A DNA stretch of 64,000 nt from Octopus bimaculoides (lineage: Eukaryota): NCBI RefSeq assembly GCF_001194135.2, contig NC_069004.1, positions 22,124,460 through 22,188,459 of the forward strand, in the 5' to 3' direction. A program made the position numbers and the translations under genes. The notes below the pieces were generated by a model that saw nothing but the letters and a program-made list of their open reading frames with translations, searched no databases and had not been told where the DNA came from. Positions 28,946 to 29,270 of the stretch are shown here, piece by piece (within the stretch, counting starts at the first letter, position 1; every line of letters begins with the position of its first letter).

Positions 28946-29157
28946 CTATAGCATCGCAGATTGTATGTGTGTGTATATATATATATATATATCTACACAC
29001 ATACAAGATGAAACCACTACGGTTGATATAATTAAATAAAACCTCTAGAGATTGTTTGAAAATATGCCCTTGTAGAAGAATCAGAATGCTCTGCAACTGA
29101 CAATGAAAGCTTCACTCTTCAAAGAATGGCCAACAGGTAAAAAATTATTCTACTCAC

Positions 29158-29270
29158 CAACTTGTTTTACGTCAAACACATTTCTTTTGATTTTGAAATT
29201 TTTTAAAACAAACTTTTGTGTTCAATAAAACTTACCTGCAAAAGAAAGAAAAAGAAAAATTTGGTTAACA
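29158..29270 (-). promoter_or_regulatory. Recursive splice site (ratchet point) with 78-nt cryptic RS-exon
   Basis: Minus strand: branch-like TTAAC (A at 29265), then atttttctttttctttcttttgCAG|GTAAGT (junction 29236/29235). A second donor TG|GTGAGT lies at 29157-29152, 78 nt downstream. Confidence 0.65.

What the first reader, a model, noticed from the sequence alone, without database searches (positions are those of the whole stretch)
29152..29270. Recursive splice site with a stop-containing 78-nt RS-exon in a giant intron of the ELKS/Bruchpilot gene
Seen: on the ERC sense (minus) strand, branch-like TTAAC, a pyrimidine tract of about 20 nt and CAG are followed with zero spacing by a perfect GTAAGT donor (29236/29235). 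A second strong donor (TG|GTGAGT) lies 78 nt downstream, and the intervening sequence reads VSFIEHKSLF-stop in phase 0. Established: this AG|GT plus downstream cryptic donor layout defines recursive splicing in Drosophila and in long vertebrate neuronal introns, where RS-exons often carry premature stops. Inference: the site divides the predicted 26,056-nt intron (43134-17079) into 13.9 and 12.2 kb pieces and could act as a poison-exon checkpoint on which promoter was used. I know of no characterisation of recursive splicing in cephalopods but cannot confirm novelty.
Basis: partly seen in the sequence, partly recalled or inferred. Interest (0 to 1): 0.82.

Follow-up and report, generated by a model that had tools for sequence, protein, structure and literature searches.

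The report
Candidate recursive splice site, octopod ERC intron
A giant intron of a cephalopod synaptic scaffold gene (ERC/ELKS/CAST) holds one near-perfect "ratchet point", where an acceptor splice site abuts a donor splice site; it fits the fly recipe for removing long introns in steps, but its use is predicted from sequence only.

Summary
The sequence observation is correct. On the minus strand, a TTAAC branch-like element (A at -30), an uninterrupted 20-nt pyrimidine tract, TT at -6/-5 and CAG abut a perfect GTAAGT at 29236|29235. A second donor (TTG|GTGAGT) lies 78 nt downstream, and the 78 nt between them has stops in all three frames.

It is the only such site on either strand of the window. 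Chance expectation is about 0.002-0.03 per 64-kb strand, and roughly ten-fold lower if the downstream donor is also required.

The host gene is a cephalopod ERC/ELKS/CAST orthologue, represented by a single exon (17078-16692, minus strand).

The claimed 26-kb intron is not supported. No ERC exon lies upstream within the window, so the intron is at least 46.9 kb. The site divides it into at least 34.8 kb and 12.2 kb.

The site meets every sequence-level criterion of a Drosophila-type ratchet point with a cryptic RS-exon. No evidence of use (RNA) or of conservation could be obtained, because no orthologous octopod DNA was reachable.

Best reading: a good candidate recursive splice site, about 50% likely to be real. 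The "promoter checkpoint" idea is speculation. If real, it is a new member of a known kind and moderately interesting.

The parts
29264..29268 (-). Branch-point-like TTAAC, with the candidate branch A at 29265, 30 nt upstream of the junction
   Evidence: Fly ratchet-point branch points map to -36..-21 with a peak at -30.
29240..29259 (-). Uninterrupted 20-nt pyrimidine tract TTTTTCTTTTTCTTTCTTTT; TT occupies positions -6/-5
   Evidence: It scores 19/20 pyrimidines in the -23..-3 window, against 13/20 for the real ERC acceptor at 17078. TT at -5/-6 is found in 99.5% of fly ratchet points.
29236..29238 (-). Acceptor CAG; the splice junction lies between 29236 and 29235
29230..29235 (-). Regenerable donor GTAAGT (the ratchet-point 5' splice site), starting immediately after the AG
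   Evidence: With the preceding CAG it forms the full CAG|GTAAGT consensus.
29158..29235 (-). Putative cryptic RS-exon: 78 nt, 23% GC, stops in all three frames (phase 0: VSFIEHKSLF*)
   Evidence: Single-copy in the window.
29152..29157 (-). RS-exon donor GTGAGT (context TTG|GTGAGTAG), able to define the RS-exon
   Evidence: p = 0.076 for a GTRAGT 20-150 nt downstream of a random position.
16692..17078 (-). The only ERC/CAST coding exon in the window: 387 nt, phase 0 at both ends; acceptor ...ttttgcag|AGACAA, donor ATAGAC|gtaagt
   Evidence: Pfam Cast, E = 5e-23. tblastn with six ERC proteins. Phase and donor position.
17079..64000 (-). The part of the host intron visible in the window (at least 46.9 kb). 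The site splits it into at least 34,765 nt upstream and 12,157 nt downstream; the assembly has N gaps at 18100-18109 and 26387-26832 within the downstream piece.
   Evidence: No other ERC exon or conserved motif in six frames. Lengths and gaps.
29340..29444 (-). Short interspersed repeat copy about 100 nt upstream of the junction. It is context only and does not include the splice-site core.
   Evidence: Other copies lie at 5352-5409, 15615-15709, 30478-30540, 48779-48818, 49302-49405 and 63091-63150.

Best explanation
The site is a genuine intronic recursive splice site: a Drosophila-type ratchet point with a cryptic RS-exon, in an intron of at least 47 kb of a cephalopod ERC/ELKS/CAST gene.

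Proposed mechanism (inferred, not shown):
1. As RNA polymerase passes the site, the very strong acceptor (branch A at -30, 20-nt pyrimidine tract, CAG) and the donor 78 nt downstream (TTG|GTGAGT) define a short exon.
2. The upstream ERC exon, which lies beyond the window, is spliced to 29235. This removes at least 34.8 kb as a first lariat.
3. The splice places the exon end directly in front of GTAAGT and so regenerates a consensus 5' splice site.
4. That regenerated site outcompetes the RS-exon donor and is spliced to the acceptor at 17078. This removes the 78-nt RS-exon and the remaining 12.2 kb as a second lariat.
5. The mature mRNA is identical to that from one-step splicing.
6. If the downstream donor were used instead, the 78-nt insert would put a stop codon into the ERC reading frame, and the transcript would probably be degraded.
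For: - All sequence elements are present and correctly spaced.
- It is the only AG|GTRAG site on either strand with a strong pyrimidine tract.
- The chance expectation is 0.002-0.03 per 64-kb strand, and about 0.08-fold of that with the downstream donor.
- It lies on the sense strand of a confirmed ERC gene, in an intron of at least 46.9 kb.
- It matches published fly ratchet-point features:
  - consensus (Y)nNCAG|GTAAGT;
  - TT at -5/-6 in 99.5% of ratchet points, and a more prominent pyrimidine tract than ordinary acceptors;
  - a branch-point peak at -30, host introns of 11-133 kb, and removed segments of 2.6-63.6 kb with a median of 16.4 kb;
  - a short cryptic RS-exon with a downstream donor that is non-coding or carries a premature stop;
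  - strong 5' splice sites enriched downstream of recursive sites, and acceptors stronger than ordinary ones.
- Its pyrimidine tract (19/20) is much stronger than that of the real exon acceptor (13/20).
- Host genes of recursive splicing are typically neuronal, and ERC is a presynaptic active-zone scaffold, as the titles and abstracts listed describe.
- The core is single-copy in the window and has no Rfam match.
Against: - There is no RNA evidence of any kind: no junction reads, no saw-tooth coverage, no lariats.
- Conservation was not tested. Two ORF-handle homology searches, an exact DNA scan and a Sepia locus fetch all failed to deliver orthologous sequence.
- Five distant invertebrate ERC loci show no strict ratchet-point motif on the sense strand within 10 kb either side of the orthologous exon.
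- Whether any mollusc uses fly-type ratchet points is unknown. Sense-strand enrichment has been reported for insects and sea urchin but not for vertebrates, and this intron is rich in transposon-derived repeats.
- At the computed chance rate, a genome of a few gigabases would hold hundreds or more such cores by accident (my extrapolation).
- The 3' end of the upstream exon is unknown, so the strength of the regenerated donor relative to the RS-exon donor cannot be judged.
Confidence: 0.5

Rival explanations
1. The site is a chance juxtaposition. A T-rich tract ending in CAG happens to precede a GTAAGT in an AT-rich, pyrimidine-skewed intron, and the site is an unused or only sporadically used pseudo-splice site with no selected function.
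For: - The sense strand carries 20 strong acceptor-like sites and 17 GTAAGT hexamers in 64 kb. Pyrimidine-rich 20-mers are twice as common on the sense strand (0.038 against 0.019).
- At 0.002-0.03 per 64-kb strand, a genome of a few gigabases would hold hundreds to thousands of such cores (my extrapolation).
- The finding was picked after reading the whole window, so a look-elsewhere effect applies.
- There is no conservation or expression evidence.
- None of the five distant orthologous loci has a comparable site.
Against: - The joint probability in this window is low: about 1e-2 for the core and about 1e-3 with the downstream donor.
- Every independent ratchet-point feature is met at once: TT at -5/-6, branch A at -30, and an exon-defining donor.
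- Splice signals this close to consensus, spaced 78 nt apart, form an exon-definition unit that the spliceosome would be expected to recognise. That is inference from general splicing knowledge, not a test.
Confidence: 0.3
2. The 78-nt unit is a conventional alternative 'poison' cassette exon. It is included in a fraction of ERC transcripts to down-regulate them through nonsense-mediated decay, rather than serving as a stepping stone for intron removal. The GTAAGT at its 5' end would be incidental.
For: - It has a strong acceptor and a strong donor 78 nt apart, with stops in all frames.
- In vertebrates, RS-exons are proposed to act as binary switches whose inclusion gives premature stops.
Against: - A perfect consensus donor exactly at the first exon base is the defining mark of recursive sites.
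- Mutagenesis in flies shows that the stronger of the two competing donors is used, so a consensus regenerated donor leads to skipping of the cryptic exon.
- The exon body is 23% GC and looks like ordinary intron.
- No transcript evidence for inclusion was obtainable.
Confidence: 0.12
3. The motif is carried by a transposable element or its tail, or it is an assembly artefact, and it recurs at many genomic places without a splicing function.
For: - A short interspersed repeat copy ends about 100 nt upstream (29340-29444), and a (CA)n microsatellite lies about 150 nt downstream (28886-29005).
- Another AAG|GTAAGT in the window (5343, minus strand) overlaps another copy of that repeat.
- The intron is full of mariner and reverse-transcriptase remnants.
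Against: - Region 29006-29345 has no other copy in the window, with or without low-complexity filtering.
- Alignments of the repeat copies stop at 29340.
- No N run lies near the site.
Confidence: 0.03

Closest known systems
Drosophila intronic ratchet points ('zero-nucleotide exon' recursive splice sites) with cryptic RS-exons (Hatton 1998; Burnette 2005; Duff 2015; Joseph 2018; Joseph & Lai 2021; Pai 2018)
   Same: - (Y)nNCAG|GTAAGT consensus, TT at -5/-6, and an acceptor stronger than ordinary ones.
- Candidate branch A at -30.
- Host intron of tens of kilobases in a neuronal gene.
- The downstream segment (12.2 kb) falls inside the fly range of 2.6-63.6 kb.
- A short cryptic exon with its own donor and premature stops.
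   Different: - The taxon is a cephalopod mollusc, for which the paper library holds no report.
- The RS-exon is 78 nt, against about 50 nt typically in fly.
- The intron is rich in SINE and transposon sequences, unlike the invertebrate long introns studied by Shepard et al..
- Use and conservation are undemonstrated here, whereas they define the fly set.
Vertebrate RS-exons in long neuronal genes ('binary splicing switch'; Sibley 2015; Blazquez 2018)
   Same: YAG|GT at the start of a short exon that carries a premature stop, in a very long intron of a brain-expressed gene. The outcome is set by competition between the regenerated donor and the downstream donor.
   Different: - Vertebrate sites reportedly do not carry the full fly consensus, whereas this site does.
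Poison cassette exons (NMD-coupled alternative exons)
   Same: A short exon with in-frame stops, flanked by good splice sites inside a coding gene.
   Different: Poison exons are included in a regulated fraction of transcripts. They do not need a consensus donor at their first nucleotide, which is my own knowledge. No inclusion or conservation data are available here.

Membership tests
Drosophila-type intronic ratchet point / recursive splice site | Juxtaposed acceptor and donor around a central AG|GT on the sense strand of the host gene | tested here: met
   CAG|GTAAGT at 29236|29235 on the minus strand. The host ERC exon is on the same strand.
Drosophila-type intronic ratchet point / recursive splice site | Consensus (Y)nNCAG|GTAAGT with a prominent pyrimidine tract and TT at -5/-6 | tested here: met
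   20-nt all-pyrimidine tract and TT at -6/-5. Criteria taken.
Drosophila-type intronic ratchet point / recursive splice site | Located inside a long intron (fly: 11-133 kb) and dividing it into multi-kilobase segments | tested here: met
   The intron is at least 46.9 kb, with segments of at least 34.8 kb and 12.2 kb. The upstream end lies outside the window.
Drosophila-type intronic ratchet point / recursive splice site | Downstream 5' splice site that defines a short cryptic RS-exon which is non-coding or carries stops | tested here: met
   TTG|GTGAGT at +78, with stops in all three frames. The stop itself is uninformative (p = 0.72).
Drosophila-type intronic ratchet point / recursive splice site | Regenerated donor at least as strong as the RS-exon donor, so that the cryptic exon is skipped | tested here: inconclusive
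   GTAAGT against GTGAGT favours the ratchet-point donor at +3. Positions -3..-1 come from the upstream exon, which is not in the window.
Drosophila-type intronic ratchet point / recursive splice site | Exon-to-ratchet-point junction reads, saw-tooth intronic coverage, and lariats to and from the site | not testable with these tools
   No RNA-seq data are accessible. The protein and contig hits for the close relative are genomic, not spliced.
Drosophila-type intronic ratchet point / recursive splice site | Strong conservation of the AG|GT core relative to its flanks in related species | not testable with these tools
   Attempts failed. There were no ORF hits at or near the site and no exact DNA match. 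The Sepia gene is too long for DNA to be returned. The only close-relative contigs cover 16273-17343.
Drosophila-type intronic ratchet point / recursive splice site | Genome-wide sense-strand enrichment of the motif in long introns (fly about 27-fold) | not testable with these tools
   Only 64 kb is available: 1 sense site against 0 antisense. There are 0 sense sites in 100 kb of five distant ERC loci.
Vertebrate-type RS-exon 'binary switch' dependent on the upstream exon or promoter | An alternative upstream exon or promoter whose junction fails to regenerate a strong donor, leading to RS-exon inclusion | tested here: not met
   The proposed first exon ending at 43135 has no Pfam or tblastn support. 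A repeat copy at 42902-43044 lies about 90 nt downstream of the claimed donor. Nothing else was identified.
ERC/ELKS/CAST (Bruchpilot-related) gene | Cast domain (PF10174) above the gathering threshold, with closest similarity to annotated ERC proteins | tested here: met
   81.7 bits against a cut-off of 29.1, E = 5e-23. 85% identity to ERC1 of Acanthosepion pharaonis.

The most novel reading that the evidence does not exclude
Cephalopods, and perhaps lophotrochozoans generally, process their giant neuronal introns with Drosophila-type zero-nucleotide ratchet points and cryptic RS-exons. This ERC site would be the first recognised example. That would place the strong-consensus ratchet point at the base of protostomes or bilaterians, and it would show that the mechanism persists in a large, transposon-rich genome.
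Probability: 0.35. Interest if true: 0.6.

Novelty: new member of a known kind. Interest (0 to 1): 0.4.

Why it matters
Recursive splicing has been documented by experiment only in flies and vertebrates, and the two differ in motif strength and apparent purpose.

A confirmed fly-type ratchet point in an octopod would extend the mechanism to a third, distant lineage with very long neuronal genes. It would also bear on an open question: do strong ratchet points disappear when genomes fill with interspersed repeats, as Shepard et al. proposed for vertebrates?

For the gene itself, a cryptic stop-containing exon in ERC would be a point where splicing errors or regulation could lower the level of this active-zone scaffold.

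The claim can be tested directly with total RNA-seq from cephalopod brain and with existing octopod genome assemblies.

On present evidence it is one motif-based candidate, not a demonstrated phenomenon.

Tried and rejected
**Conservation, via called ORFs.** I joined the six-frame open segments over the site into one query, and then the larger flanking ORFs into another. Both homology searches returned nothing. The related genome seen in Logan runs SRR11869385/90/91/94 (89% nucleotide identity) has no called ORF there.

**Conservation, via exact DNA.** A scan of JGI metagenome contigs for the 26-nt junction core gave 0 matches.

**Cuttlefish orthologous intron.** The Acanthosepion pharaonis ERC1 gene model spans 121 kb, so no DNA was returned.

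**Deep conservation.** Five distant invertebrate ERC loci (L005, L009-L012), each with 10 kb either side of the orthologous exon, hold no strict ratchet-point motif on the sense strand. This is uninformative, because the octopod site is 12.2 kb upstream of the exon.

Rejected: no Pfam hit, no tblastn hit, and no conserved ERC motif.

**A structured RNA at the site.** Rfam gives only sub-threshold microsatellite matches next to the site, and none over it.

**Repeat origin.** There is no second copy of 29006-29345 in the window.

**A second ratchet point at 37235 (TAG|GTGAGC).** Its pyrimidine tract is weaker (15/20), and its first 23 nt resemble a sequence at 30008, which suggests a repeat family. 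I did not count it.

**Species of the Logan runs.** The accessions occur in no paper in the library.

**Sibley et al. 2015.** The paper is not held under its PMC id. I took the model from a review and from Joseph & Lai.

Full report
**Observation.** The minus strand reads ...aaactgTTAACcaaaTTTTTCTTTTTCTTTCTTTTgCAG|GTAAGTtttattgaac...aacaagTTG|GTGAGTag.
- Exact coordinates: TTAAC at 29268-29264, with its A at 29265, 30 nt before the junction. An uninterrupted 20-nt pyrimidine tract at 29259-29240. T at both -6 and -5. CAG ends at 29236 and GTAAGT begins at 29235. The second donor GTGAGT begins at 29157. The interval 29235-29158 is 78 nt.
- Phase 0 reads VSFIEHKSLF-stop, and the other two frames also contain stops.

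**Is it more than chance?**
- Among the 17 AG|GTRAG sites on the two strands of the window, this is the only one with at least 16 of 20 upstream pyrimidines. It has 19; the next best has 15.
- Sequences simulated from first-, third- and fifth-order Markov models of the sense strand gave 0, 0 and 0.003 YAG|GTAAGT sites with at least 17/20 pyrimidines per 64-kb strand.
- A model-free estimate multiplies the 20 strong acceptor-like sites on the sense strand by the frequency of GTAAGT after AG (5.9e-4). This gives 0.012, falling to 0.002 at the 19/20 threshold.
- A GTRAGT 20-150 nt downstream of a random position has p = 0.076.
- The in-frame stop carries no weight, because 72% of random 78-nt frames here contain one.
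- The composite is therefore a 1e-3 to 1e-2 event for one window. Extrapolated by me to a genome of a few gigabases, that still allows hundreds or more chance cores. The finding was also selected after reading the whole window.

**Gene context.**
- The ORF reading through 17078-16692 (minus strand) hits Pfam Cast (PF10174) at 81.7 bits, E = 5e-23.
- Its closest named relative is ERC1 of the cuttlefish Acanthosepion pharaonis, at 85% identity.
- The window is therefore cephalopod but not Sepia.
- tblastn with six ERC proteins found only this one exon in 64 kb.
- The conserved upstream segment (SMNSIKTFWSPELKKER and neighbours) is absent from all six frames.
A repeat copy lies about 90 nt downstream of its claimed donor.
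- The host intron therefore extends beyond the window and is at least 46.9 kb. The site divides it into at least 34,765 nt and 12,157 nt, the latter including two assembly gaps.

**Local context.**
- The 340 nt around the site (29006-29345) are single-copy in the window.
- A short interspersed repeat copy lies at 29340-29444, and a (CA)n microsatellite lies at 28886-29005.
- Rfam finds nothing over the site.
- The rest of the intron is typical transposon-laden DNA.

**Comparison with known recursive splicing.** Published features of fly ratchet points:
- The consensus is (Y)nNCAG|GTAAGT. The motif is enriched about 27-fold on the sense strand of long introns in fly, and several-fold in other insects and sea urchin. 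It is enriched at most 1.5-fold in vertebrates (Shepard 2009).
- There are 197 ratchet points in 130 introns of 11-133 kb. Removed segments are 2.6-63.6 kb (median 16.4 kb). Branch points lie at -36 to -21 with a peak at -30. TT occupies -5/-6 in 99.5% of sites. The pyrimidine tract is more prominent than at ordinary acceptors. Most host genes peak in nervous tissue (Duff preprint).
- A short cryptic RS-exon (about 50 nt) with its own donor must be recognised first. It is poorly conserved and disrupts the reading frame. It is skipped because the regenerated donor wins the competition (Joseph & Lai 2021).
- Acceptors at recursive sites are stronger than ordinary ones, strong donors are enriched downstream of them, and 63-70% of very long fly introns are recursively spliced (Pai 2018).

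The present site meets each sequence-level criterion. Its pyrimidine tract (19/20) is also far stronger than that of the real ERC acceptor in the window (13/20). One criterion could not be judged: the relative donor strength, which depends on the last three bases of an upstream exon that is not in the window.

**What could not be tested.**
- Use of the site needs RNA-seq, RT-PCR or lariat reads, and none of these is reachable here.
- I tried four routes to conservation. All failed, for lack of retrievable octopod or decapodiform intron sequence.
- Five distant invertebrate ERC loci have no strict ratchet-point motif on the sense strand within 10 kb of the orthologous exon. This gives no support, but it does not reach the 12-kb distance of the octopod site.

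**Weighing.**
- If cephalopods have a fly-like density of ratchet points (of the order of one per very long intron), nearly every sense-strand motif of this quality would be real.
- If they resemble vertebrates, where strong-consensus sites are not enriched, most would be chance.
- The literature held here has nothing on molluscs. No paper holds both 'recursive splicing' and 'octopus', and the one paper that also holds 'cephalopod' mentions each term once.
- There is also a mechanistic expectation that an exon-definition unit with near-consensus signals will be recognised. That is inference from general splicing knowledge.
- Taking these together, I put the probability that this site is used recursively at about 0.5. 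I give about 0.3 to an unused chance motif, about 0.12 to a conventional poison cassette exon, and a few per cent to repeat origin or artefact.
It is speculation.

**Novelty and verdict.** If real, this is a new member of a known kind: a fly-type ratchet point with a cryptic RS-exon, in a taxon where none is reported in the searched literature.

Noticed in passing
window 37235 (minus strand): A second, weaker juxtaposed site: ...ttgtctttgctgttgttgTAG|GTGAGCATC. It has 15/20 pyrimidines and TT at -6/-5, and lies 8 kb upstream of the main site in the same intron. Its first 23 nt resemble GTGAGCATCATAGCCATGT at about 30060 on the plus strand, which suggests a diverged repeat.
   Followed up: partly
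window 5343 (minus strand): AAG|GTAAGT overlapping a copy of the short interspersed repeat (ctttgcctttcatccttttgggtcaataag|GTAAGT), in the intron downstream of the ERC exon. Copies of this repeat can evidently carry consensus donors in the sense orientation.
   Followed up: no
window 5635-6262 (-), 24090-24701 (-), 26928-27188 (+): Remnants of Mos1/mariner-type transposases inside the ERC introns. Pfam hits are Transposase_1 (E = 4e-15 and 5e-20) and HTH_48 (E = 4e-14 and 2e-5).
   Followed up: yes
window 10391-10888 (+), inside the 10-12 kb block: A reverse-transcriptase fragment (RVT_1, E = 2e-18) coincides with the only GC-rich, strongly GC-skewed block of the window (GC 0.47, skew 0.39). 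It is a retroelement antisense to ERC.
   Followed up: partly
whole window: Pyrimidine-rich 20-mers (at least 16/20) are twice as frequent on the ERC sense strand (3.8%) as on the antisense strand (1.9%). This strand asymmetry raises the background of acceptor-like sites.
   Followed up: partly
window 18564-18782 (+) and 29991-30122 (-): ORF translations share NYSNPKEFLS(T/A)HGYDA.PLLLL. This points to another interspersed repeat family, with one copy about 750 nt upstream of the splice-site candidate.
   Followed up: no
L005, L009, L010, L011, L012 (10 kb upstream of the orthologous exon): In all five distant invertebrate assemblies, no Cast-matching ORF is called within 10 kb upstream of the exon orthologous to 17078-16692. 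A long intron at this position may therefore be widespread, although short exons could have been missed.
   Followed up: no
L001-L004 against window 16273-17343: Genomic contigs from Logan runs SRR11869385/90/91/94 come from an unnamed close relative (89% nucleotide identity, 98% protein identity in the exon). These runs would be a ready source of orthologous intron sequence if their reads could be searched by DNA.
   Followed up: partly
It has no homology support, and a repeat copy (42902-43044) lies about 90 nt downstream of its claimed donor.
   Followed up: partly
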